Shown here in pieces: positions 2,057 to 17,576 of a stretch of 64,000 nt of DNA. The notes under the pieces were generated by a model. That model was not told where the DNA came from, searched no databases, and saw only the letters and a list, made by a program, of their open reading frames with translations. This DNA is from Fonticula alba ATCC 38817 (taxonomy: Eukaryota > Protista > Nucleariida), in assembly GCA_000388065.2 (NCBI GenBank), contig KB932205.1; one strand, written 5' to 3'. Within the stretch, counting starts at the first letter, position 1. Every line of letters begins with the position of its first letter. Position numbers and translations under genes: made by a program.

Positions 2057-4026
2057 ATGGGTTTCTTCCGCGAGTCGCCTGCCCAGCAAATTGAGTCCTC
2101 CTCCAGCTGGTCACTGGATTTGACCGATGCCGACATCTTCGGCGCCAGCCCGGATGCCGGCGGGGAAACCGGCCCCCAAAGTGTCAACCTCTCCGACGAG
2201 CCTGCCTCCTCGACGACCGGCCCCGGGCGCCGGTCACGGGCCTCCCCCGGGGGCGAGCTCTTCCTCGGCAGCATGCCGATCGGTGATCTGCGCGACCGGA
2301 TCCGCAGCACCGGTGTCCTGGAGGCCCTCCGGCAAAAGGGCTACTGGGATTTGACCCTCGAAACCGACCTCAGTGATCCGTTTGTCCACTCGTTCTTCAT
2401 CTTTGCCAACGCCTCGTCCGGTCGCCGGGGCCCTTGCGACGCTCCGGGCCCGAGCGCCAGCGCCGATGCCAAGCCGCCGGGCACCACGACCGGCGGGGCT
2501 CCCGAGCGCCTGCTCCTGGTGCAAGTATGCTTCCGCGACATCAAGGACCCTGGGCAGCTGAAATATGCCCTTCATGTGCAGCCAACTCCCAGCCAGCTTC
2601 TGGCGCGGCGCGGACTCAGTCGCAGTCCCAGCGCCGCGAGCGTTGTCGACAACAGCACCGCCGGCGGGCTGGCGGCCGATGGCTCCAGCTCCGAGCCCCT
2701 CTCGACCAGCCAAACCCCCTCCCCCGTCGGCTCTCGATCGGCGTCGCGGTCCGACTCTGGGGCCCTGTCTGTCGGGGCCAATGGAAATGGCCCGGCCGCC
2801 GCCTCCTCCTCTTCCCTCAGCCCGGGGCAGGAGTACTTCGCGTCCTTCATCCTGCCCTTGGCTTCACAGCGCCTTCGTTTGCTTGGACTGGACTGGATGT
2901 TGCTCCAATCGCCCAATGAGAGCTTCTCCCCGACGCGGCCGGCGCTCCCCGGCCAAACACACCCCGGGCTTGGGATCCTCCGCCACATGGGGGATGTCAT
3001 TGGATGGATTGCCTCCGAGCGTCTCCGGTGCGATGCGCTGGTCAATGCGCCGGCCCACTTCCACAATGCCTATATCTACTCGCGCTTTGGCTATGCCTTC
3101 GCCGATCCCGAGGTCCAGGCGGCCTTTAATGCCGTTGCTCGGGATTTGGACCGAGACCAGGAGGCCGCGGCGATTGTGGCTCGGCAAACCGCCGGGCGGG
3201 ATGGCAACACGGCCACGGCCCCGATGACGGGTACCCCCTCCGGGACTCCATCCGAGTCTCCGAGCCCCCCTGCTCGACAGCACACCTACTCGGCGGTGGC
3301 TGCGTCTGGGCGTCGTGGGTCCGGTGTCCTGTCGAGCCGTGTGGGCTTGGCCCTGGTGGCGAATGCCGTCCTGCAGGGCCGTCTACGCCTGCGGTTGCCA
3401 CAGATGCGCGACATTTGCGGATGTCCCGATGGCTGCCCGGCCGCCATCGGGCCTGAGCAAGATCCCCCCGAAGACCCGGTGGTCATCTGGCGCCCCGAGG
3501 AACAGCTCTTCCCCCTGAGCCCGCGTTTCCGGACATACCTCACCAGCCGGCGGTACACCGAGCTCCGGGATGCCTTTGCTCGCCAGGCCCGGGCCTTCCG
3601 CTGGCCCGGGGCCCGGTCCCCCCCTCCGGCCCCGGCCAGTCTTTCGCGCACGGTCCTTGGATGGTTCACCGGTGAGCATGCGCTCGAGCCGGCGCCGGGT
3701 CTGTTTTACATTGACTGGGATGCCTCGCTGGCCGATACCGCCCAGCTGGAGGCCGCCCTGAGCGTGGTGGATGCCACTCGCCTGTATCAGGCTCGCTTGG
3801 AGCAGCTCCTCCTGGACCGGCCATGTCGAGTGGTTGCCCCGGCCGGGGCGGCTGGCACTTCGGCCCCCATCACCGGCGTCGGGATCGACTCGCCGGCCGC
3901 CTCGCCGCCCTGTCCCAATATCGACGCCTCGTCGGCCAGCGCCCACCCCAGCCCGAGCCCCAGCGGCAATGTCGCCACCGGCACCGAGGCAGCAAATGCC
4001 GCGGCCACGGGGCCCTCTGCCTCGAT

Positions 4027-4243: not shown

Positions 4244-6760
4244 ACAAAGTGTCCTTCTCCTCCTTCTCCTCCTCTTTCGTGCATTTGTACGTGTGCACGC
4301 GCGTATAGACGTACATCATACCTACCCCCCCCCCCCCGCTCCTCCTCTCTCTTTCGCTCCTTTCAACACATGTGTATGTGCGCTATTATTCGGGAGGGAT
4401 GGTCTCTCGGGGGCCGGATGCAGGCGGGCGGGGGGAGCCGGTTCCCGGGCGAGATCTCCCGACTCCATGTGACGGACGAGTACACCCACACGTGCTCACA
4501 CGCGGAGCCAAACAAGGCCCTCTCGATCCGACGAGTCGTGCTCCTTGGATGGCGTGTGATCACATGAACACACCATGGTCCATGCAGTTAGGGTCGCAGA
4601 GGCCCGCCTGGTACCCCAGGGCGACATCGTGACCCGAGAACATGCGCGTGAGTATAGAATGCTATGGAGGCTTTCGCCTGTTCCAAGGGCAGGGCCCAGA
4701 TCCGTCCGGCGAGGCGCCGGGGGCACTTTCGGAGGAATCTCCACACAATACAATCTCTTCTTGTTCCCGCGATCCCGTTTGTCCATCGGGCTCTTCCATA
4801 TATGACTCATGTAACAGCCTGGAGGGGGGGGGGTGGCGGCTATGCGGAGAGCGCGGCATCGGCTGGGTCCACACGGGGCCGGGCCCGAGGGATGCCCCGA
4901 CCACGCCCTGGGGCCGGGTCCTTAACCGACCGATGACACCCGGAGACGACGTCCCAGCGAAGAGGGCAACCACCGGCGGCCTGCTCCTGTGCGGCCGGAA
5001 GGCCGAGGCGGGGCGCAGGGGCACAGAACACTGGCAGCAAACGCGCCCCCCCCCCCCCCCCCCGCCTCTTCTGGGGCCTTGTGCATTGATGGTGGTCGGC
5101 CAGCCTGCCGGGGAATGTCCACCGCCGGGGGGCGCAGCCGATCACATTCGCGCGGTGGGCAACTGACGCGGCAGCCCATAAGTCAATAAGGTATTTTTAT
5201 TTAGTATGATAAGCATGTGTGGGCACCCTTCTGTCCCCTGCCCTCGCCCGACCTTGGATCGTGTCCGCAGCCCCGGTCTCTGCGCTTGGCCCTTTGCCTT
5301 TTCCGGCGGGGAGGCCCGCCCGCCACGGGCCCACGCGGCGGGGGCGGCGTCTCCGGGACCGGGGCTAGGGGCCGCCGGGAAGCGGGGAGCAGGGCCCCCC
5401 TCCCCCCGCGGGGGCAGGAGCTGGGGGAAAGGCCAACAGAGGGTGAGAGAGACACCGAGAGAGCGAGAGGGAGACCGAGAGAGAGAGAGAGACGAGGAGC
5501 TCAACGTCCACTGGCGCCATTTCCTCCTCGCCCTATCGGTCTGGCCTTCCCCCGGGCCTCAGGGGTACCTCCCCTGGGGGGACGCTCGAGGTGCTGGTTC
5601 CCCTCGCCCCTCAGTCCTGGCCCCACCGGCTAGCCGGGGGTCCAGAGTGGGGACGGGTGCTCCCGGCTGGCCGGCCGCGCCCGCGCGTCTGCAGTTTTAT
5701 GGTGTGTACATGCATGTATGCATGCACGCATGTGTGTGTGTGTGTGTGNNNNNNNNNNNNNNNNNNNNNNNNNNNNNNNNNNNNNNNNNNNNNNNNNNNN
5801 NNNNNNNNNNNNNNNNNNNNNNNNNNNNGCCGGAACCGGTGGCCGAAGAAGTGCGCCCTCAGGCGGGCAACCTGCAGGGGGGGAGGGCGTGGCAAGGGGG
5901 GAGGGGGGGGGGGGGGCCGGGTGTGGCCAGGCGGCCGGGTGACGAGGGGTCGCCCTCAAAAAAAAATCGGTCCGGGCGGGGCCGACGAAAGGCCATCAGG
6001 CCATTCTAGTGGGGATTGTTTTTTTCTGCCAATCGCAGAATGATCATCACATTCCAGATTGAGATGCCCATTCCCGGGAAGGCACGCTCAGACCGCTGCT
6101 TTCCCCCCCCCCCCGCCCGCACATCCGGGCGCGTGAGGAGAAACCCGCGAAAAGTGCAAGGGGCGGACTCCGATACACATCGCGGCGAAGGGCTTCTGTC
6201 GCTGGGCCCTCTGTGTGTGCCCCCCCCCCCACCCCCCACCCCTTGTCCGTCCCGGTCGCACCCCCCTGGCCTCCCGGAGGCCGGGCTGAGATCTGCCCGT
6301 GCCATGCCCGTTTTGATTGGGGCCGGGGGTCGGCCAGGCGCGAGGCCAGGCAAGGCCCGCGGTCAGGCAGGGACTGACCACCGGAGGCCCTTCCCACACG
6401 AATATCGGCTCCCTCCCCCGGCCCCGGCCTCGGGCTGCCGGATGCGGTGGCCGTCAACTGGGCTTCCGTCGGCGGGGACCGGCCCCTGCCACCTTGGCAT
6501 TGAAGGCCCCACTCCCCCCTCCTCCCTCCCTCGCCAAGAGCCAGTCCCGCGCAGAGGCCTAAACTTGCGCGCGTGCGCGCGCGCCAAGCGAAGGACGCGG
6601 GCAGGGGGGACACGCCGCGCCGGTTCTCGCGTGGGCCTGGCCCTGGTGCTCGGGGCCATTGCCCCAGTCCCGTGTGTGATGGGCGTGGCTGGCTGCGAGG
6701 CTGCACGCCTCCTGCTGCTGCTGCGCATGCTTCTCCCCAGGGGCACGGCCGGCCCTCCGC

Positions 6761-6805
6761 ACCAGCCGACCCAGACACCAGCCGACCCAGACACCAGCCG
6801 ACCCC
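6761..6805. repeat. Short tandem repeat, 16-bp unit ACCAGCCGACCCAGAC x~2.8, followed by (GACACACC)n
   Basis: accagccgacccagac accagccgacccagac accagccgacccc directly visible. Confidence 0.85.
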
Positions 6806-7259
6806 CTCACTTTCTGGAGACGCACCCACACCAACACACCGACACACCGACACACCGACACACCCACACATAAACGGCGAATCATCCCCCCCCCCCATTC
6901 CGCCTCTGTTCAACACAGGACCCAACCCTCCTCCCGCCGGCCGATCGCCGGGGGCCATCAGCCCACTTCTCCACCGAGCCGGGGCAGCGCCCTTTTCGGA
7001 CAGTGCCGGGCACCAGTGCCACGCACGAAGCCCTCTTCCACCTCTTTCTTCGGTTGCCCCCTGCCCTCGCCTCGCCTTCCGTCCTCTTCTCCGCTCTCGT
7101 CACGCCCCCACTCTCATCCATCCACCCCCTTTGCCTTTCCCGCCCCGCCGCCCCAACTCCCGTACGTGCCGCCTTCCGCGCCCCGGCCAAGATCTTCTCC
7201 TGATTCCCCCGCCCCCGTTGCCGGCCCCACCGCCCTCGACCGATGGCACACGACCCTCC

Positions 7260-7298
<39 letters not shown>

Positions 7299-7401
7299 TC
7301 CTGAACAGGTCGGTCGCGGCCCCCCCCCCCCCCCCCCCTCTCCCACTCTCCTCTGCCCTCGCGCACACGCGCACCCACACCCACACCCACACATCCCATC
7401 C

Positions 7402-9825
7402 ATGTCTACCTCCTCGCGGCAGAGCTCCCCGGCACCGGCTTCGCCGGTCAGCACCCAGAGCAGCTTGCAATTGGAGCCGGGTGCCACCGCCTCGCCGACC
7501 TCCTCCACAGCAAGCAGTGGCAGCATCGCCGGGCACTCGCCTCCCTCGGCCTCGATCTATCCCGCCATGTCCGAGAGCATGCCGGCCCTGGTGTCGGTCT
7601 CGACGCCGAACCTGGCCCCGGCCTCCCAGCGGGTATCCTTCAGCAGCCTGGGCATCGAGCTGCCCGGGGAGACCGCCAGCGGGTCGGCCTCTTCGCCGGC
7701 CCTCGCGCCGCTGACCATCCCCTCGCCGTCGACCAGTGGCGGAGGCAACAGCCCCCGGTCGGCGCCAGCCGGCCAGCCGCCGGTGCCCTGCCGCCATGCG
7801 CTGTCCATCTCGGTGGAGGTCATCGAGGCCAAAGATCTCAAGGAGCGCTATGACACATACTGCACCATCACCGTCAACCAGGAGGAGAAGTTCCGCACCA
7901 AGTCCCAGCTCCTCACCCATGAGCCGGAGTTCAATGAGCAGTTCTATGTGTGCGTGTGCCTGGGCTCCTGGTATCCTGCTCGCCGCTCCCCCTCGGCCGG
8001 AGGGGTCGCACGCAGCCACTGACCCGTCCTTTGTCCGTGCTCATTGCCCAGTCCGCTGGAGGTGGACTTCCGCGCGCTGGATGTTGTTCTTTGGGACGAG
8101 AAGCGCCTCATCTCCGACCGGGCCCTCGGCCGGGTGTCCTTCACCAAGGACTTCCTCCGCATGCGCTCCGGCAAGATGCTCGAGCAGTGGTATCCCCTCA
8201 GCTCGCCCGGCTCCGACAGCGTGGTGTCCGGTGATGTGAAGCTCGAGATGGGTCTCATCCCGGGTGCCCAGCCGGGCGGCAACCACCGGCTGATTGTGAG
8301 CGGTGTGTACTCCTCCCTCCCTGTCTCGGTCTCTTCCTCTGTCTCTGCCCCGTCCCGCCCCGTTCCCCCGAGAGGCATTTCTCGATCTCTGCTGACGCCA
8401 TTCGCCCCCTCCCTCCCTGCCGTGGCGGCGGTGCCGCGACCGCCCAGTGTCCGAGGCGCGCGACCTGCTGGGCCGCGACTCGGCCACTCCCCCGGACACC
8501 TATGTCACGCTGCACATGTTCCCCGACGAGCAGATGGCCCTGCCCACCCGGGCCACGCGTGTCTTCCTCCGGTCATCGGCCCCCAAGTTCCAGCAGACCT
8601 TCGAGTTTGAGTTCGCCGGCGATGTGGGCACCCACTCGCTGCATGTGGCCCTGTGGGACCATGCGCGCTACCCGGGCAACGACTTCATGGGACACTTCTC
8701 CGTATCCATGGCCGATCTGCCGGAAAACTGGACCATCAGCGAATGGTTCCCACTGCTGCCCCCGCCGTCGGGGCTGCTGCAGTCCCTTGGCATCAAGGCG
8801 GAGGATGGCCGGCCGCTGTCCTTCATCCCGCGCTTCCGGCGGAACCGCTCGAGCACCGGTGCGCCTACACACACACACACACACACGCACACATGCACAC
8901 ATATGCCCTTTCTCGTTCTCCCTCCCTCTCTGTTCCCCCTTCTATGTCTCCAGCACCGGGATCAGTGCCCTTCTTGCTCCCCCCCCCCTGACCTGTACAT
9001 CTCCTCACCACCACCGCCACCGCCATTGATTCAGGCGGCCTGTCGGAGCTTCTGTCCCGGCCGCGGACCTTTATTGAGTCCTTCCAGAAGGCCCCCCTGG
9101 ACCAGGGGCCCATGGCCCTGGCCGCCATGCGCGGGTCCATTCGTTTGCGCGTGAGCTACTCCGAGGAGTACATCCTCGAGCGGAGCCATTACCTGCCGCT
9201 GGTGCGGCACATTTCCCGGCGGGACTTCCTCCTGTCGGCCATGCTCGGCCGGTGGTCGGCCGCCCGTGAAAGCCTGTCTCTGACGCTGATGCGAGTGTTC
9301 GATGAGAATGGCATCCTGGTGCCCTTCCTCCACTCGATGATTCGCGTGGAGCTGGCCCAGACCACCGACGTGAACACCCTCTTCCGTGCCAACTCTCTGG
9401 CCAGCAAGGGCATCGACGTTTTCATGAAGGCATCTGGCCATGCGTTCCTGGTCAATACCATCGGCCAGCCGGTGCGGGATCTCATCCTGTCCAAGAAGTC
9501 CTTCGAGGTGCGTGTGCATTCCCCCTCCCCTACCGCTCCCGGGGGAGGGAGGTGGGGCAGTGGCCCCTGCTCGATCGAACAGGGGCCTTTTCAGCTGAGA
9601 CCGGCAGCCCGGAGCCGCGTCTTTTGCTGCTGCTGCTGCCGCTGGCTTTCCTTCCCCCCCCCCCCCGGGCTGCCGCAGACACCAGCATGCCCCCCCACCC
9701 CCCCCCCCCCCTCCCCCCGCGGGAAGCCTCGGCGGGCGGTGGCGGGGGGGGCGTTTCCAGTGGGAACCGCAGAGGGTCCCCGCTGGGGCCGATGGTGGTG
9801 CATGGGGGTGCCGGTTGGGGGGGGT

Positions 9826-9868
<43 letters not shown>

Positions 9869-12800
9869 CGGAGGAAAGCACAACCCACTGCGGAGCCCGC
9901 CGGCCCTGAGCCGAGCTTGGGTTTCTCGGGCGGGCCTGGCTGAGACGGGGGGCGTGCTGGAGGAAGGGGAGGGGCAACCGTGCGGTCAGACGTTCCTCCG
10001 GCCCGCAAAATCGGGCCTTTTTGTCGCGCTCCGGGATACCTCCCGCCGGGGATGTCCCCCCCCCCCCCGCCCCCGCATGGCTTCCTTCCCCACCCAGCTC
10101 GGCGTGCAGGGCCCGAGGCGGCCCGCCCGCGCCCAAGGGCTCGCCCTCTCCTCTGACTGGGGCTGGCGTCTGGGGCAAATGCGCTCTACGCGCGATACTC
10201 GCCCCGGCTGGGACTCCGACGCGCGATGCCAAAGGGCCCCGGATCCTGCCCCTCCGTCAACAAAAAGCGCCAGTCCTCAGCGGAGACCCCCGCCCCCCCC
10301 CNNNNNNNNNNCCCGGCATGTGCTGACGCGTATACCTTTTCACACGTTCCTGGATAACGTACACGTACACACGTACACACGTACGAAAACACACCCGCCG
10401 GCAGGTCGACCCCATGCGTCTTGCCAAGGGCGAGGATATCGACAAGAACTGGAAGAACATCGAGCACTTCCTGGGTATCATCATCAAGGCGATCATCAAC
10501 TCGGTGAAGCACTGCCCACCGGCTTTCAGCTTGATTTTCAGCTTCATCCAGGCTGAGGTGATCGCTCGGTTCCCAGACAGCACGGCGGCCCGGTACACAT
10601 CCATTTCGGGGTTCTTCTTCCTGCGATTCTTCTGCCCGGCCATCTTGGGCCCGAAGCTCTTCGGACTGTGGGACGGTACGTGAGGCACTCGTCCGGAGGC
10701 GTCTTCCTTTTCTGCCTTCCTCCCCCCCTCCCCCCCTGTCTCTTTTCCCTTGGCCCATGCCCCGCCTCTGCTTTGGCGCATATTTCCCCTCTCCCCTCCC
10801 GGCCGCCTGCACCGGGCAGCTTCCATTCATGCAGCGCCACCATGGCCATCCACTCACTCCTACTTTGGTCCTCCATCCCGCGCCAAAACAGAGGCCATCG
10901 ACCCGCGCCAGGCCCGCGGTCTGACCCTTATTGCCAAAATCATCCAGAGCATGGCCAATCTGGTGGAGTTCGGCAACAAGGAGGCCTTCATGACGCCCAT
11001 CAACGATGTGATTTACCAGTACATCCCCTCCATCAAGGAGCTGCTCGATGAGATCTCCGTACGTCAGGCAGAACCCCACGGCAGCCCGAATGTCGATACA
11101 CACGCGCACACAACAAGCGGAGGCTGACTCTCAGTAATATGCCATGTGCCATCTATGCACACGCACACGCACACGCACACGCACACGCACACGCACACAC
11201 ACAGTCCCCCCTTCCGGAGTTCCATGTCAGTAAGCTCCCCAAGCGCATGATCTCTTGGGATGTGCCGAACCCCCTCTTCTCCGACCACTCGGACTATGAG
11301 CGCCAGTGCTTCCGGCTGTTCACCTATCTGGAAACCGAAAGCAAGAAGGTTTCCCAGCACCTGGACCCCTCGGAGTATGCGCTGTTCGACGAGCTGCAGG
11401 ACATGCTGGACGACTTGCGCGAGAAGCACCGGTCTTGCGAGGACTTCTTCAAGGCCCGGACCAATCGCTACTCCATGTCCAGCCCGTTGAGCTCCACCTC
11501 GCTGAACCTGTCCTCCGAGCTGTCCAGCAAGAACCCCTTCTCCAGCGGCCTGCGCCTGTCGCGCCTGTCGGCCGGGTCTCTGGGGGCCTCTTCCCCGGGG
11601 TCGGTCTCCTCGTCCTCTCCCTCGCCGCACTCGGCGCCGATGGTCCCCTCGCCGCTAAGCACCGGTGCCCATACCCCGCGATCCGACGACCCGCATGAGC
11701 TTGAGTGGGCCTTCAGCCAGTCGGCCGGCAGCTCGCCCAAGCACCGGACCTCGATCCTGGTCCCCATCGGGTCGCCCTCGGCCATGGCCGCGGCTGCGGG
11801 CGTGGCCAATGCCGTCGCCGAGACCCCGGTCCTGGCCGCCAGCCTCACCTCGACGAGTGATGTTTCAACCACCCCTCTGGTGGGAGACATTGCCCTGGCC
11901 TGTGAGGAGGAGGTTCCGTCGGGCGATCTGCCCACCCTGCCGGACGCGGTGGTTGATGACCCGGCCCCGCCGGTGCCCGTGGAGTCCACCGATGCCGAGG
12001 CATCGCCAGCCACCGACAAGCAGGCCGACTCGCCATCTGGCGCGCCGACCGAGCCGCAATCCCCGGTGCTGGACACCACTCCGGGCGACTTCCACAAGGC
12101 CAGGGAGGTCTTCCTGGCCGCCGAGGAGTCATACATCCCGGCGCCAAGTGCCCAGTTCGCCGTGGCCCAGCCGAACTTCCTCACCGCCGACAAGACCATT
12201 GCCATGGAGGATTCGGTGCGTGTGCCGCGCTGGCTCTTTTGCGCCTGCCCTGCTCCATGTTGCCGAGTGGGGCCGGACATTTCCCCTTTTCCTGCTGCTC
12301 CTTTGGTCCCTGGTTTGCCCCCTCCCCTGCTCGACACTTCCTTCTGGTGAACTAGCACCATGCCACCGGCCAGCCATTCTCCCTTCTTACCTCTGCCCCC
12401 CTTCCCTCTCTCTCTCTCTCCCCCCCCCCCCGGATCAAAGGTTGTCCTCACTGGGGTTTTGTCCACGCCGACGATTGTCCGCTCCCCGGCGCCGATGCCG
12501 ACACCAGTGGTGGCCATGGACCTGCCGGTGGCCTCCTCGGTCCCGGCTGCGGCGGCCCCCTTGGAAGAGATTGTCATGCCGGCCCTGCCGGCCAGCCTGA
12601 CAGCCGCCACCGGGCCCACGATCACGCCCTCTGCCTCCACGGTGACCACCTTCATCATGCCGCTGCGTGCGGATCTCGCGGAGCCGGTGCCGGTGGCCCC
12701 CTACTCGGATGCCGGGCCGCCGATGTCCACGTACATTGCCCAGGCCAATACGCTGACCGTGTCGGTCAGCCCGATGCCCGAGCCGCTGGTGATGCAGGAG

Positions 12801-14453
12801 GTGGTGGTCGGCTCGCCGCCGGCACCGGTGGCCACCGACGAGTTCGGCCTGCCCGTGGACTTCCTGGATCAGCTGGACGCGGCCCCGGCCTCGGCCCCGG
12901 CCCCGGCCCCGGCCAGCTCGGACTGGGCCGCCACCAATCCCGCTTTGGCGGCTCTGCTCCTTGCCACTCAGCACGCGTCCAGCCATGCGGGCAGCCTGGC
13001 GGCCGGGCTCGGCCGCGGCTCGACGGCCGCCGGTCCGACCGGGTCGGTCAGTTCGCCGCACACGGCGGCCACGCCCCTCTCGCCGGTGGACGATTTGGAC
13101 AGCCTGCTGCAGGAGCTCGAGGCGTCGGGCTCCGGCTCGGGAACCGGCTCGATCGGGTCGGTCGCATCGCCGGGGGGCGCTCTCGTCGCCACGCCGGCCG
13201 CCGGTCAGCAGCATCCTCACCAGCCGTCTGGCACTTCGTCGAGCTCCCTGCAGCCGGTGTTCGCCAACAACGACCCCACGCAGCCGGTGCTCCAGTGTGC
13301 TGCCTGTGCCTATCACATCGAGCTGGAGGAGGAGTACCTCAGCTGGGGCGGCTTCGTTTGGCACACGGACCACTTCACCTGCTCGCACTGTGACTGCTCG
13401 CTCACCGGCAGCCGCTTCTACTTCCACAACCGGCAGCTCTACTGCTCGACGCACTTCGAGGCGCTCTTCAGCTGTGGCAAGTGTGGCGACCCTGTGTCGA
13501 CGGATGTACGTACTCTCTTTGGGGGGGGGGGGGGGGGGGTTCAGCAGCATCGCGTGGCTCTTTGCGTCCCGCCCTCTGTTCTTCCTCTCGCCGGCACCTG
13601 TACTGACTCCTCCTCTCTCTCTCTCCACACACACACACACACACACACACGTGTCTCAGGTCGTCGAGGCTCTTGGCAAGAAGTGGCACGCGAACTGCTT
13701 CTGCTGCACGGATTGTGGCATGGTCCTGTCATCGAACTTCATGGCCGACGAGCACCGGATGCCCTATTGCCGCAACCACTTCCTGCAGTCGCGCGGCATG
13801 ATTTGCCGTGTGTGCACGCAGCTGGTGTCCAGCGACTTCGTTCGCATCGATGGCGCCTACCTTCACACCAGCTGCTTCACTTGCCAGGTGCGCCATACAG
13901 CCTGCAACATCCACGCACACGCACCGGGGTTCACTTGCCTTCCGTGCCCCTGTCTCCTTTCTCCTCCTCTTCCGGATGGGACTGACGCTTTTTCCTTTCC
14001 TCCTTCCTTTCCCGGTCTCTTCCCCGGTCTGCCCCTCCTCCTCCCGGCTCCTGTAGGAATGTGCCTCCTGCCTCTCCGGGAAGGCATATCTCCGGGTCGG
14101 CGACAGCACATACATGTGCGCGGACCATTATGTGTGCTTCTCATGCAAGCATCCCATCTCCGACGGACAGGCCGTCTCGGCACTTGGTGCGTCTGGCTCT
14201 TGGCGCGGGCCGGGTGCCAATTGTGGCCTCCTCTCTACCGCACCGCCGCCACCGACACATGCGCACCTTTCTCCCCTCTGTCTTTGCGATTGCTGACCGC
14301 CACATGATGCGCCCGATCGCCTGCTGTGCTGCCATGTGCGCAGGGAAAAAGTTCCACGTCGATCACTTCAACTGCACTTCCTGCGGGAACACGCTGATCG
14401 ATCAGCAGCTGTATGAGCGCGGTGGCATTCCACTATGCTACTCCTGCTTCTAG
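7402..14453 (+). CDS. C2-C2-RasGAP (GAP1-like) protein with a Ser/Pro-rich linker, LD motif and four C-terminal LIM domains; 11 exons, ~1554 aa
   Basis: Exons 7402-7949, 8052-8302, 8448-8858, 9035-9507, 10405-10675, 10892-11058, 11205-12215, 12441-13505, 13660-13887, 14057-14186, 14344-14453. All introns are GT-AG with consistent phases; total 4665 nt. Two C2 domains (VEVIEAKDL...EPEFNEQF; VSEARDLL...LHVALWDH). RasGAP arginine finger TLFRANSLASK and signature FLRFFCPAILGPKLF. Four CxxC...HxxC/HxxCxxC...CxxH/C LIM repeats. Confidence 0.9.
9826..9868. repeat. ~43-nt poly-G run in the largest RasGAP intron (9508-10404), with poly-C tracts upstream
   Basis: Directly visible homopolymer. Confidence 0.85.
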
Positions 14454-15060
14454 TCATTTTTGGTGCGTCATCCGTCGCCCCGTCATCCGGGAAACGAGAT
14501 GCCTCTTTTTGCCGCGAGGAGCTTCAGATTCTGACGCTGACCCTTGTCTGCGCTTCCGATGGTGGCAACGACCACCACCACCACCACCACCGTACCGCTG
14601 CCACCGCCACCATCCGTGTATAGTTATACCTCAGCGATGTTACTCCCCTCCGATCATCGGGGGACGGGCACGCCTCCGCGCGCTGCCCGCGTGACCCTAC
14701 ACGCCCTGTGAGACTTCCCCGCTGTTAGTTGCCCTTGTGTGTTAATAATGTAGCTGAAATTGCTTCCACAAAGCGTCCTGCATGCTCTCTCTCTCTCCCA
14801 TCATGGTCCCTGCTCCACATATGCATGCTCATACACATGCATGGGATGCTATGGCGATATACAGGGAGCCAGGCGAGGAGAGAACATGAAGGGATACAAA
14901 GAAAGAGGGAGCGAGGGCGTGTGTATGTGTGTGTTTGTTTGTTTGTTTGTTTGGTCTTTTGGAGCTCTATTGCTTGCGGATGTGCCTCCCCCTCCTGGGG
15001 ATACAGGAAGAATGCCAGATCCGGAGGAAGCAGACGGGACAAGAGCCCACGTGCGCCAGA

Positions 15061-17576
15061 TTACCCACTTCCCCACTTCTGGTTCCACTTCAGCAGGGTC
15101 TTGATGTCGTGCACCCAGTCGGTGTTGTTGGCCACCGGTGCCCCGCTGGGGCTGAGCTTTTGTGGAACCAGCGCCGGCAGGGGGAAGGGCGATGCCCGAA
15201 CATGGAGGGTCTCCCGGAAGTCCAGCTTCAAATTGTTCCGCCCGTCGAAGCTGACCTCGGCCGAGGACCGGCTCCCAGCAGCCAGCTGATGAAGGAACAC
15301 GAGGGAGGAAAAGGAAAGGTCAGCATGTGGCCTGGCACGGGCAAGGCCAGTGTTGCAGGAGGCACCCAAAGGAGAGACGCACCCGGAGGGAGATCGAGCA
15401 GTCCGGCGGCAAAACCGCCGGCCGGAAGGACAAGCTGCGCGGGCAAATCGGCGTCAGCAAAAGGCTTCGAACGGAGGGGTGGACCACCGGGCCCCCGGCT
15501 GACAGAGAATAGGCCGTCGACCCTGTCGGTGTGGCGATGATCAGCCTGGACACGTAAGTGGCCATGGGTGGGGGGGGGGGGGGGGGGGGGGGAAGGAGTG
15601 CAAGAAAGAACAAGGCCATCATTTTTTATTCCCATATAAAGTGAGTTGTTCTCTTCCATGTGTGTGTGGTTTTCTGGCGTTGTCCCCCATTCTCGTTGGG
15701 GGAAAAGACAATGTTTGAGGTTCTCCCCCGGGCTCGGGGGGGGGAGGGGGGCAAGACAGAGAGCGGGTGAGCGGGTGAGCGGGTGAGTGAATGGATGGGA
15801 AACAAGAGGGGGGGGGGGGCGGATTGCTTGTCGAAACATTTCGATAATGCTCTCCAGAGTAGCGCAGCAGGAAGACGCCGCAGCATCGGAGACGGGCGGA
15901 ACGCACCCATCGGCGATGGTTTCGGTCATGTACTTGCCGTCGATCATGATGTCCATGAAAGCCGGCGAGGTGTTGTTCCCCCGGTGGAGGGTCGTCTCAT
16001 TGAGAGCATGATACTCTGGGGAGGTGGAGAGAGAGAGAGAAGAAGAGGGGGAGATCAGGGCCGATGGCCACGTAAGATCCACAGGGTTAGACACGGGGGG
16101 GGGGGGGGCAGGAGAGAGCGAGAGAGAGGGCTTCGAGGGAAACAGGCATCACACACGAGAGCCATCTCGCGCAGCGCACCATCCTTCACCTTGCCATCGG
16201 CGTCCACAATGGTACAGTGGAGTCGCATGCGGGGGACGAATGCCACCGGCTCCTCCAGGGCCTGGCGCAGGATCGACCCAAATGAGTCCACTCGGAAGGG
16301 CATCAGGAAGCCCAGGGTCCCCATGCTGAGGGCCATAACCGGCGGGACTGGGCTGCCCTGGAAAAGAGAGGACACATGCAGCAGGGTCCCATCGCCGCCG
16401 ATGGCCACCACCAGGTCCACAACATCCGCCAGCTCCGAGCGGTTGACTGTAAAGGCGTAGCAAAGGAGGGGAGAGGGGGGGGGTGAGTTGGACGCGGACA
16501 AGAGGGGGGGGGCGGGCGGGAGGCGCAGAGCCAGCATCTGGGAAGGCAGGCGGCGGGGACAGAAAGAAAACAAGAGGAAGGCAGGCGCACTGGATGAATA
16601 GCCGATGAGATTGGGTGGCAGGGTGGGCGAGGCCGACTGGGTGGGCTGCTGGCCCGGGGTCCCGGGCTGCGGGGACCCTGTGGCCGGGTGACCCACATCG
16701 GCATAGTCATCATCCGGCACCGGATAGCAGGCCGAGGCCAGGGCCGACGCCGGCGTCAGCATGCGACGATACTCCTCCAACATATGATCCTCGACGATGA
16801 TGTTGAACCGGGGGCTGGCCCCGGGCCCGGAGGCGGCCAACGGATGGTTATCATCCGCCGCCCCGGGCAGGCTGGTAGATAGGGCCCCCAGGAGCCCGGA
16901 GGCCGGGTGGTGTGGCACGCCGGATGACTGATCCAGCAGCTCGGCGATGCGGACATTCAACGAGGGGGACATGCCGTGTGTGACCGGGCCTCCGGCGGAC
17001 AGCTCCGACACGCGCAGCAGATCGCGCACAATGCGTGAGAAGGCCCGCGTGACGGAAATATCCCCCTTCTTGGCGATGAGGAGGATATTCCGCGGCGGGG
17101 TCGACCACTTGAGGGAGAAAAGGCTGTGTGGCGGAGGCAGCACCAGGAGCGGGGGAGGGGGGGGAGGGGCCGAGCGGAAGGGTAAGTCGGACAGACCAGC
17201 CAAGGGCGCGAGGGTGCCGGAGGCGTGGGGGCGGTACGCACTTGGAGACCGACCGCGAAAGGATCTGCCCATTGACGTCATCAATGTGCTCGGAGCAAAT
17301 GGGGCCGCCCTCGAGGCGTGCGCCGGATGGCAAGTTCATACCACAGCCGGTCAGGTTCAGGGGTGTGGCGAGGCTGGCGGGCCCGGGCTGCACGCTGGCC
17401 TCCTGGCCGGCGGCCGTGGCGGCCGCCGAGTCGAAGGTCAACGGGTCGGGGGCCTGGCTGAGGGGGTTCGCCGGAATTGGGCCAACTGGCTGGCCCACCT
17501 GCGAGATCAGCCGCAAAGGCACCCGCCGGGGAAGGTGGGCGAACCGCGAGTAGACACGCTGCGCGACGGAACTCAT
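15061..17576 (-). CDS. NADK: NAD(H) kinase, probably mitochondrial (POS5-like); 6 exons, ~543 aa
   Basis: Exons 17576-17242, 17123-16591, 16446-16180, 16015-15907, 15545-15383, 15285-15061 (1632 nt, in frame). Motifs [55 protein letters not shown]. The N-terminus [25 protein letters not shown] is Arg-rich and acid-free. Confidence 0.93.

What the first reader, a model, noticed from the sequence alone, without database searches (positions are those of the whole stretch)
7402..14453. RasGAP-paxillin chimera: C2-C2-RasGAP fused to an LD motif and four LIM domains
Seen: one phase-consistent 11-exon model joins a GAP1-type N-half (two C2 domains, intact arginine finger FRANS at 9382-9396, FLRFFCPAIL) to a long S/P/A-rich linker and four tandem LIM domains. 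Established: GAP1-family proteins (RASA2/3/4, RASAL1) end in PH-BTK domains, and a 4xLIM C-terminus with LD motifs is the paxillin architecture. Inference: a Ras inactivator hard-wired to adhesion or actin structures, coupling adhesion sites to Ras shut-off in an amoeboid cell. I do not recognise this architecture from described proteins.
Basis: partly seen in the sequence, partly recalled or inferred. Interest (0 to 1): 0.8.

Follow-up and report, generated by a model that had tools for sequence, protein, structure and literature searches.

The report
RasGAP with paxillin-like LIM tail
This is one real, expressed Fonticula alba gene that joins a GAP1-type Ras switch-off enzyme to four paxillin-like LIM domains; the same layout sits unremarked in chytrids, a blastoclad and an aphelid, so it is old and conserved rather than a Fonticula oddity.

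Summary
An 11-exon gene at 7402-14453 (+) encodes a 1554-aa protein: C2, C2, RasGAP, a roughly 565-aa S/A/P-rich linker with one LD motif, then four LIM domains. My model matches the public Fonticula alba protein H696_03440 (XP_009495581.1, "hypothetical protein") letter for letter.

The N gap (10302-10311) lies inside intron 4. cDNA-derived contigs from two samples join the flanking exons in frame. The same contigs splice exon 7 to exon 8 across 12216-12440, the RasGAP-to-LIM link, and nothing covers that intron. The two-gene rival is therefore rejected.

The architecture is not unique. C2-C2-(C1)-RasGAP-linker-3/4 LIM occurs in at least 14 named zoosporic Holomycota, including Batrachochytrium, Synchytrium, Paraphysoderma and Amoeboaphelidium. 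Their RasGAP domains cluster together, and the LIM domains correspond position by position.

The N-terminal half is closest to the animal GAP1 family (RASA2/3/4, RASAL1). The LIM array aligns colinearly with a protist paxillin, but its paxillin origin is unproven. The LD motif is found only in Fonticula.

I found no paper that describes this layout.

The proposed function is inferred, not shown: a membrane-bound Ras/Rap GAP held at actin or adhesion structures by its LIM tail.

Verdict: a new variant of a known kind, of moderate interest. The scan also noted this same stretch once before, from an overlapping window.

The parts
7402..14453 (+). Coding part of the gene. Exons: 7402-7949, 8052-8302, 8448-8858, 9035-9507, 10405-10675, 10892-11058, 11205-12215, 12441-13505, 13660-13887, 14057-14186, 14344-14453 (stop TAG at 14451-14453).
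   Evidence: Splice sites and phase were checked. The product is identical to public protein P0001. Exons 3-11 are joined in single cDNA contigs.
7804..8238 (+). C2 domain A (aa 135-245), spanning intron 1.
   Evidence: Pfam C2 hits. The AF2 model gives a beta-sandwich with pLDDT about 82-92 across the exon junction.
8287..8755 (+). C2 domain B (aa 262-369), spanning intron 2.
   Evidence: Pfam C2 at residues 262-369. AF2 model.
9112..11363 (+). RasGAP domain with its flanking helices (aa 430-760). The Pfam core is aa 501-674, at 9325-10959.
   Evidence: Pfam RasGAP, 113 bits. Sequence matches to p120GAP and SynGAP. Fold match to p120GAP from the Ras-RasGAP complex, TM 0.84 by target.
9382..9396 (+). 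Arginine-finger motif FRANS (R521).
   Evidence: It aligns with FRATT of p120GAP. F520, R521, N523 and S524 are invariant in the 16-member family alignment.
10618..10644 (+). FLR motif FLRFFCPAI.
   Evidence: Coordinates. F633, L634 and R635 are invariant in the family.
9508..10404 (+). Intron 4. It holds the assembly gap (N at 10302-10311), a 43-base G run and several C runs.
   Evidence: cDNA contigs skip 9505->10403, GT..AG, with nothing in between. Homopolymer runs listed.
12216..12440 (+). Intron 7, the link between the RasGAP half and the LIM half. It is 225 nt long; if retained, it would give an in-frame TGA at 12348.
   Evidence: In both cDNA contigs, record positions 3188/3189 (X1) and 3187/3188 (X2) join 12214 to 12440. 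Depth inside the intron is zero.
11364..13283 (+). S/A/P-rich linker (aa 761-1325), probably disordered.
   Evidence: Composition is S 15%, A 15%, P 13%. There is no Pfam hit here and no conservation in the family alignment.
13095..13118 (+). LD motif LDSLLQEL, in the context PVDDLDSLLQELEAS.
   Evidence: A strict LDxLLxxL match occurs in 0.24% of 20,000 linker shuffles; the extended form occurs in none. The 7-mer DDLDSLL is shared with the paxillin-class protein P0195.
13296..13460 (+). LIM1 (aa 1330-1384).
   Evidence: Pfam LIM. LIM HMM coordinates.
13473..13782 (+). LIM2 (aa 1389-1440), spanning intron 8.
13804..14131 (+). LIM3 (aa 1448-1500), spanning intron 9.
   Evidence: It groups with the penultimate LIM of all family members.
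14135..14450 (+). LIM4 (aa 1502-1554), spanning intron 10. It ends at the last residue of the protein.
14463..14623 (+). Intron in the 3' UTR (GTGCGT..AG), starting 9 nt after the stop codon.
   Evidence: The cDNA contigs leave the window at 14462 and continue with TTATACCTCAGCG..., which is the sequence from 14624 onward.

Best explanation
Shown here. This is a single expressed gene of Fonticula alba (H696_03440). It encodes a catalytically intact-looking GAP1-type RasGAP (C2A-C2B-RasGAP). In place of the PH-BTK tail of animal GAP1 proteins, its C-terminus carries a long, probably disordered linker and four tandem paxillin-like LIM domains. It belongs to a conserved family of zoosporic and amoeboid Holomycota, which in most members also carries a C1 domain between C2B and the GAP domain. 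Inferred. The two C2 domains (plus C1 in chytrids) place the GAP domain on the membrane next to lipid-anchored Ras or Rap. The LIM array, helped in Fonticula by an LD motif, holds the protein at actin-rich or adhesion-type structures. Ras/Rap-GTP would then be switched off locally at those sites.
For: One gene: cDNA contigs of 4872 and 4875 nt from two samples carry exons 3-10 in the listed pieces and exon 11 by the 14185->14343 joint, with every intron between them removed, no mismatches, and no coverage in intron 7. The model equals the public protein. Catalytic integrity: the arginine finger and FLR motif are invariant across the family, and the GAP core superposes on p120GAP from the Ras complex. 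GAP1-type: RASA3, RASA2, RASAL1 and RASA4 are the top structural matches over C2A-C2B-GAP, at E 1e-41 to 1e-39, and starfish RASAL1 and Capsaspora 'RASA3' are tree neighbours. Conserved family: at least 14 named species share the architecture. All LIM-bearing proteins fall in one RasGAP clade with Fonticula in an unresolved position at its base. LIM1 and LIM3 are positional orthologues of the family's corresponding LIM domains. Paxillin-like tail: 33% identity over four colinear LIM domains with a paxillin-class protein; start-to-start spacing of 59/59/54 against 59/59/59; LD motif with p about 0.002. Tandem LIM arrays of the paxillin, zyxin and FHL classes bind strained F-actin (preprints 10.1101/2020.03.06.979245 and 10.1101/2020.03.06.980649).
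Against: No localisation or GAP assay exists. The RasGAP clade has weak support (SH-aLRT 81). The phenylalanine needed for strained-actin binding sits at the exact position only in LIM1. The LIM3-LIM4 linker is 2 residues, against about 6-8 elsewhere. The LD motif is absent from the 15 other family members. The LIM region matches human PINCH as well as it matches human paxillin. Ras versus Rap specificity cannot be read from the sequence.
Confidence: 0.6

Rival explanations
1. There are two neighbouring genes: a RasGAP ending at TGA 12348-12350 and a paxillin-like LIM gene starting at ATG 12360 or later. They would be joined only by read-through splicing or by an over-eager gene model.
For: With intron 7 retained, the frame closes at 12348 and an in-frame ATG follows at 12360. 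The LD-plus-4-LIM part on its own looks like a complete small paxillin. The tool warns that a contig spanning two genes does not prove a single transcript.
Against: The exon 7-exon 8 junction is an exact GT..AG splice with zero coverage in the intron, in both samples. The donor GTGCGT and the pyrimidine-rich acceptor resemble the gene's other introns. The same fusion is present in at least 14 other named species, with positional LIM orthology.
Confidence: 0.03
2. It is one gene, but the LIM tail is not a cytoskeleton or adhesion anchor. It could be a general protein-binding or autoinhibitory module, for example folding back on the GAP domain or docking another signalling protein. It might also be released as a separate LIM product by an internal start or by cleavage.
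For: LIM domains are general protein-interaction modules. The mechanoresponder phenylalanine is only partly kept. The LIM3-LIM4 linker is atypically short. PINCH, reported as a non-mechanoresponder in the Sun et al. preprint, matches as well as paxillin. Earlier scan notes report LIM domains fused to other signalling enzymes in this genome (unchecked).
Against: Four tandem LIM domains with paxillin-like 59-residue spacing, plus an LD motif, form the arrangement that targets paxillin-class proteins to adhesions and strained actin. The family consensus keeps an aromatic residue at or next to the critical position in the last two LIM domains.
Confidence: 0.3
3. The domain is a degenerate or non-catalytic RasGAP that acts only as a scaffold.
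For: There are no biochemical data. The Pfam alignment breaks into two stretches that skip profile positions 63-103.
Against: The arginine finger, the FLR motif and further core residues are invariant in the family. Chytrid orthologues show the same short region yet still give a single full-length Pfam match. The cDNA shows no missing exon. The model of the GAP core has pLDDT above 90 and superposes on p120GAP.
Confidence: 0.07

Closest known systems
Animal GAP1 family (RASA2/GAP1m, RASA3/GAP1-IP4BP, RASA4/CAPRI, RASAL1)
   Same: Both have tandem C2A-C2B directly in front of a RasGAP domain. Identity is 25-28% and Foldseek E is 1e-41 to 1e-39 over the whole C2A-C2B-GAP unit. They are neighbours in the RasGAP tree.
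   Different: There is no PH or BTK domain after the GAP domain. In its place are a roughly 565-aa linker and four LIM domains. Orthologues in chytrids carry a C1 domain between C2B and the GAP domain; Fonticula has lost it.
Paxillin family (paxillin, Hic-5, leupaxin; fungal Pxl1; protist paxillin-like proteins such as P0195)
   Same: Both have an LDxLLxxL motif followed by four C-terminal tandem LIM domains that end at the C-terminus. The alignment is colinear at 33% identity over 234 aa, and LIM spacing is the same for LIM1-3.
   Different: Here the LD-LIM unit is the tail of a protein with about 1250 aa of RasGAP and linker in front of it. There is only one LD motif, and only in Fonticula. 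The LIM3-LIM4 linker is 2 residues. One-to-one orthology with paxillin LIM1-4 is not resolved. Human PINCH scores as well as human paxillin.
Fungal LIM-RhoGAP proteins (S. pombe Rga1/Rga3/Rga4; Lrg1)
   Same: Both put LIM domains and a small-GTPase GAP domain in one polypeptide within Holomycota. The fission-yeast LIM proteins are listed in the Winkelman et al. preprint, and LRG1 in M. oryzae is covered in PMC3914944 (listing).
   Different: Those proteins have a RhoGAP fold, not RasGAP, and their LIM domains are N-terminal and fewer (my own knowledge). I did not compare the sequences here.
Capsaspora owczarzaki 'RAS p21 protein activator 3' (P0026) and the Corallochytrium C2-C2-RasGAP protein (P0022)
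   Same: They share the C2-C2-(C1)-RasGAP core and fall in the same half of the RasGAP tree: Corallochytrium inside the 37-row LIM-bearing clade, Capsaspora just outside it.
   Different: Neither has LIM domains. Capsaspora has two C1 domains.

Membership tests
RasGAP (Pfam PF00616) catalytic domain | Profile match above the curated cut-off | tested here: met
   113.4 bits against a 28.3-bit cut-off on P0001.
RasGAP (Pfam PF00616) catalytic domain | Arginine finger (FRxxxxxxK) and FLR motif | tested here: met
   FRANSLASK and FLRFFCPAI are present. The finger aligns with that of p120GAP and is invariant in the family.
RasGAP (Pfam PF00616) catalytic domain | All-helical RasGAP fold | tested here: met
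   The AF2 model has pLDDT above 90 over the core. TM by target is 0.84-0.85 to p120GAP in 1wq1 and 8bos.
RasGAP (Pfam PF00616) catalytic domain | Stimulates GTP hydrolysis on Ras or Rap | not testable with these tools
   This needs a biochemical assay.
GAP1 family (RASA2/3/4, RASAL1) | Tandem C2A-C2B directly N-terminal of the GAP domain | tested here: met
   Pfam C2 x2. Top structural matches cover residues 9-568 of RASA3.
GAP1 family (RASA2/3/4, RASAL1) | C-terminal PH domain with BTK motif | tested here: not met
   P0001 has no PH or BTK hit, whereas starfish RASAL1 (P0015) shows both in the same kind of scan.
Paxillin family | Four tandem LIM domains at the C-terminus | tested here: met
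   Four LIM domains at aa 1330-1554, ending at the last residue.
Paxillin family | N-terminal LD motifs (LDxLLxxL) | tested here: inconclusive
   There is one strict match, with p about 0.002 by shuffling. It is absent from 15 other family members.
Paxillin family | LIM domains orthologous to paxillin LIM1-4 | tested here: inconclusive
   BLASTP alignment to the paxillin-class protein P0195 is colinear (E 1e-35). The single-LIM tree gives no one-to-one pairing, and PINCH scores equally well.
Paxillin family | Binds FAK, vinculin or parvin through LD motifs and localises to adhesions | not testable with these tools
   This needs cell biology and binding assays.
Strain-sensing (mechanoresponder) LIM arrays | [quoted passage not shown] | tested here: inconclusive
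   There are four LIM domains. Linkers are 6, 8 and 2 residues, and spacing is 59/59/54. The 2-residue linker is atypical.
Strain-sensing (mechanoresponder) LIM arrays | [quoted passage not shown] | tested here: not met
   LIM1 has F. LIM2 has M, with F at -10. LIM3 has Y at -10. LIM4 has L, with Y at -8. The paxillin-class references have F in 11 of 11 LIM domains measured. I mapped the position from the mutant numbering in the preprint and my own recollection of the FHL2 sequence.

The most novel reading that the evidence does not exclude
The family is an ancestral holomycotan mechanochemical feedback device. The tandem LIM tail would recruit a GAP1-type Ras/Rap GAP to tensed actin or adhesion sites, so that force-bearing structures extinguish the Ras/Rap signal that built them. 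Among the best 150 representatives, the family appeared only in lineages that keep crawling or zoosporic cells. It would have been lost, or stripped of its LIM domains, where amoeboid motility was lost.
Probability: 0.2. Interest if true: 0.75.

Novelty: new variant of a known kind. Interest (0 to 1): 0.5.

Why it matters
Ras and Rap GAPs are usually positioned by lipid- or phosphotyrosine-binding modules. A conserved family positioned by a paxillin-type LIM array would link small-GTPase shut-off directly to the actin and adhesion machinery, in lineages that branched off before animals evolved focal adhesions. The family is present in Batrachochytrium dendrobatidis, and genetic tools now exist for chytrids (papers listed: PMC10823177, PMC12595416, PMC7213984). 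The idea can therefore be tested directly. The finding also warns that "paxillin" calls based only on four C-terminal LIM domains in early-branching fungi may in fact be the tails of this RasGAP.

Tried and rejected
Several steps led nowhere or had to be corrected.

- My first two choices for the exon 1/2 junction (7950/8062 and 7970/8052) were wrong. The right one is 7949/8052, with a GTGCGT donor.
- A scan of genome contigs with the RasGAP exon found nothing, because that collection holds only bacteria and archaea.
- RNA runs X12 and X13 ('organism B') matched only the poly-C and poly-G tracts, so they are not from this organism.
- The word-indexed protein searches missed the chytrid orthologues and were swamped by vertebrate DAB2IP isoforms. 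They say little about distribution; the exhaustive HMMER search was the useful one.
- Five literature searches and four paper look-ups found no description of a RasGAP-LIM protein.
- Rfam gave no hit in 6500-15500.
- The ESM Atlas has no large cluster that combines RasGAP and LIM.
- A tree of single LIM domains has too few columns to decide on paxillin descent.
- I considered a hidden exon in the assembly gap, because the Pfam RasGAP match skips profile positions 63-103. I rejected it: the cDNA is continuous there, and the orthologues have the same short region.
Full report
**What is in the sequence.** Three-frame translation of 7300-14700 shows coding segments that change frame at GT..AG boundaries. 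After correcting the first junction, eleven exons join in phase:

- 7402-7949, 8052-8302, 8448-8858, 9035-9507, 10405-10675, 10892-11058
- 11205-12215, 12441-13505, 13660-13887, 14057-14186, 14344-14453

Donors are mostly GTGCGT or GTACGT. Introns are 102-225 nt, except intron 4 at 897 nt. The product is 1554 aa.

Pfam on single exons and on the whole protein finds two C2 domains, a RasGAP domain and four LIM domains.

**The assembly gap.** The ten Ns at 10302-10311 lie inside intron 4 (9508-10404). Exon 4 ends ...SKKSFE and exon 5 starts VDPMRL..., which gives the continuous RasGAP motif. In the RNA-derived contigs the two exons are adjacent, joined 9505->10403 (GT..AG) with no extra letters.

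The Pfam match does skip profile positions 63-103. Chytrid orthologues have the same short region, though, and still give one continuous match. The gap therefore hides no exon, and the frame across it is known.

**One gene or two.** The critical link is intron 7 (12216-12440). If it were retained, the frame would stop at TGA 12348, and an in-frame ATG follows at 12360. That made a two-gene reading possible on sequence alone.

Runs X1 and X2 come from two samples of one 2012 study, are labelled RNA by guess, and are held as Logan contigs. Each contains one contig, of 4872 and 4875 nt. These contigs cover exon 3 to exon 10 in the listed pieces, and reach exon 11 through the 14185->14343 joint. 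Every intron between these exons is removed and there are no mismatches. Record positions 3188/3189 (X1) and 3187/3188 (X2) join 12214 to 12440.

The binned depth fits zero coverage inside the intron. The absence of all ten coding introns shows that the material is cDNA.

By arithmetic, the contig starts about 57 nt upstream of the ATG at 7402. That agrees with the modelled exons 1-3, which I could not lay directly because of the 6,000-letter limit.

The tool cautions that a contig across two genes does not prove a single transcript. Here the junction is an exact splice, and the fusion is conserved in other species (see below). I put the two-gene reading at about 3%.

**Identity.** An exhaustive HMMER search with exon 4 returned a 1554-aa protein at 100% identity. 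It is letter for letter my model. It is Fonticula alba H696_03440 (XP_009495581.1, KCV69975.1, UniProt A0A058Z6W5), named only 'hypothetical protein' or 'Ras-GAP domain-containing protein'. The gene model is therefore already public.

**It is a family.** Among the best 150 representatives, 18 besides the query carry LIM signatures behind a RasGAP domain. Pfam confirms the layout C2-C2-(C1)-RasGAP-3/4 LIM. The named sources are:

- Chytrids: Batrachochytrium dendrobatidis, Entophlyctis, Blyttiomyces, Polychytrium, Thoreauomyces, Fimicolochytrium, Synchytrium, Globomyces, Boothiomyces, Phlyctochytrium, Polyrhizophydium and Rhizophlyctis
- The blastoclad Paraphysoderma
- The aphelid Amoeboaphelidium

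In a RasGAP-domain tree of 123 sequences, all 21 LIM-bearing proteins fall in one clade. Fonticula sits in an unresolved position at its base, and support is weak (SH-aLRT 81). The LIM-less sequences inside the clade are mostly short or partial models.

A tree of single LIM domains gives independent support. Fonticula LIM3 groups with the penultimate LIM of all ten members (SH-aLRT 90). LIM1 groups with the first LIM of the four-LIM members (86). The LIM array was therefore inherited together with the GAP domain, and was not added in Fonticula.

Fonticula differs from most members in three ways. It lacks the C1 domain through a clean deletion. Its linker is among the longer ones in the family. 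It alone has an LD motif. It also has a LIM-less paralogue elsewhere in the genome, H696_02859.

**The N-terminal half.** An AlphaFold2 model of aa 130-765, built on a 22-sequence alignment, has mean pLDDT 85. It shows two beta-sandwiches and a helical GAP domain, and confidence stays high across the exon 1/2 and 2/3 junctions.

Against reviewed UniProt models, the best matches are RASA3, RASA2, RASAL1 and RASA4 over their entire C2A-C2B-GAP unit (E 1e-41 to 1e-39, 25-28% identity). p120GAP, DAB2IP/SynGAP and Bud2 rank lower. Against solved structures, the GAP core superposes on p120GAP from the Ras-RasGAP complex (TM by target 0.84-0.85).

Strict membership fails, however, because there is no PH-BTK tail.

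Both C2 domains lack the middle aspartate of the D-x-D calcium-binding loop: they read WDEK and WDHA. This is my own reading of the sequence. Calcium-independent membrane binding seems the more likely, but that is inference.

**The C-terminal half.** Four LIM domains run from aa 1330 to the last residue. Their start-to-start spacing is 59, 59 and 54 residues.

The region aligns colinearly, LIM1-4 to LIM1-4, with P0195 at 33% identity over 234 aa (E 1e-35). It also shares the 7-mer DDLDSLL with P0195. P0195 is a protist protein that is itself clearly paxillin-class: its LIM2-3 and LIM4 match human paxillin in register, at 119 and 84 bits, against 77 bits for PINCH. A chytrid family member aligns with P0195 in the same colinear way.

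Direct comparison of the Fonticula tail with human proteins is less clear. PINCH LIM4-5 scores 62 bits and paxillin LIM2-3 scores 59.5 bits. The Atlas ranks them equally. The single-LIM tree does not pair family LIM domains with paxillin LIM domains. 'Paxillin-like' is thus a fair description of the layout, but descent from paxillin is not shown.

The LD motif is unlikely to be chance given the linker's composition: 0.24% of shuffles give a match, and none give the extended form. It is, however, a Fonticula-only feature.

**Mechanism.**

- Shown: intact catalytic motifs and fold, membrane-binding-type domains in front, and a paxillin-like tandem LIM array behind a long flexible linker.
- From the literature: tandem LIM arrays of the paxillin, zyxin and FHL classes, including fission-yeast Pxl1, bind mechanically strained F-actin. 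This requires three or more LIM domains, short linkers and a conserved phenylalanine in each domain (preprints read).
- Inferred: the protein is a membrane-apposed Ras/Rap GAP concentrated at actin or adhesion structures, where it terminates Ras/Rap signalling locally.
- Weak points: only LIM1 has the phenylalanine at the exact position. LIM2 has F one residue earlier, LIM3 has Y, and LIM4 has L followed by Y. The LIM3-LIM4 linker is only two residues. The family consensus does keep an aromatic residue at or next to that position in the last two LIM domains.

I put about 50% on LIM-mediated cytoskeletal or adhesion targeting, about 30% on another protein-binding or autoinhibitory role, and under 10% on a non-catalytic GAP domain.

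**Novelty.** I found no paper that mentions these accessions or a RasGAP-LIM protein. That includes a survey of Ras-regulator architectures, a survey of the LIM superclass and a study of fungal focal-adhesion proteins. The library is limited to open-access text, so absence is not proof.

The Atlas holds no cluster of 50 or more members that combines the two domains. The sequences themselves are public and machine-annotated. I therefore class the finding as a new variant of a known kind: real, conserved, unremarked, and testable in chytrids that can now be transformed.

Earlier notes of this scan report LIM domains fused to other signalling enzymes in Fonticula, namely a phospholipase C and an RGS-PX protein. 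I did not check those notes. If they hold, LIM-tagging of signalling enzymes may be a wider habit of this lineage.

Noticed in passing
window 14463-14623: There is a 161-nt GTGCGT..AG intron in the 3' UTR, starting 9 nt after the stop codon. The cDNA contigs jump from 14462 to 14624.
   Followed up: partly
window 9508-10404: Intron 4 is four to nine times longer than the gene's other introns. It holds a 43-base G run (9826-9868), four C runs of 13-14 bases and the assembly gap. Its homopolymers attract large numbers of unrelated reads. No Rfam family matches it.
   Followed up: partly
window 7243-7401: An in-frame ATG at 7243 lies upstream of the annotated start. It sits in (CT)n, (CA)n and poly-C low-complexity sequence, and it is outside the cDNA contig, whose 5' end lies near 7345. 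It is probably not used.
   Followed up: no
window 7255-7300, 8866-8900, 11150-11203, 13625-13652: (CA)n and (CT)n microsatellites sit in the 5' flank and just upstream of several acceptor sites, in introns 3, 6 and 8.
   Followed up: no
window about 12510-12542: A second contig in X1 and X2 matches a short stretch ending at 12542 and then continues with unrelated sequence (TTCTCGACCACGGCGG...). It is probably a chance GC-rich match rather than an isoform.
   Followed up: no
window 14131-14135 (aa 1499-1502): The linker between LIM3 and LIM4 is only two residues (..CADH-YV-CFSC..). The paxillin-like reference has six more residues there (alignment gap).
   Followed up: partly
P0153/P0154 (Batrachochytrium dendrobatidis strain with MT418 locus tags): In one Bd assembly the orthologue is annotated as two adjacent genes, of 222 aa and 1286 aa. 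Five other Bd records give 1465-1478 aa, so this looks like a split gene model near the N-terminus.
   Followed up: no
P0149 (Fonticula alba H696_02859, elsewhere in the genome): This is a LIM-less C2-RasGAP paralogue of 750 aa. It falls in the same RasGAP clade as the LIM-bearing family.
   Followed up: partly
PMC5042518 (Orpinomyces focal-adhesion study): The 'paxillin' of an anaerobic gut fungus was called from a 5'-partial sequence with four LIM domains only. Such calls could be tails of this RasGAP-LIM family.
   Followed up: no
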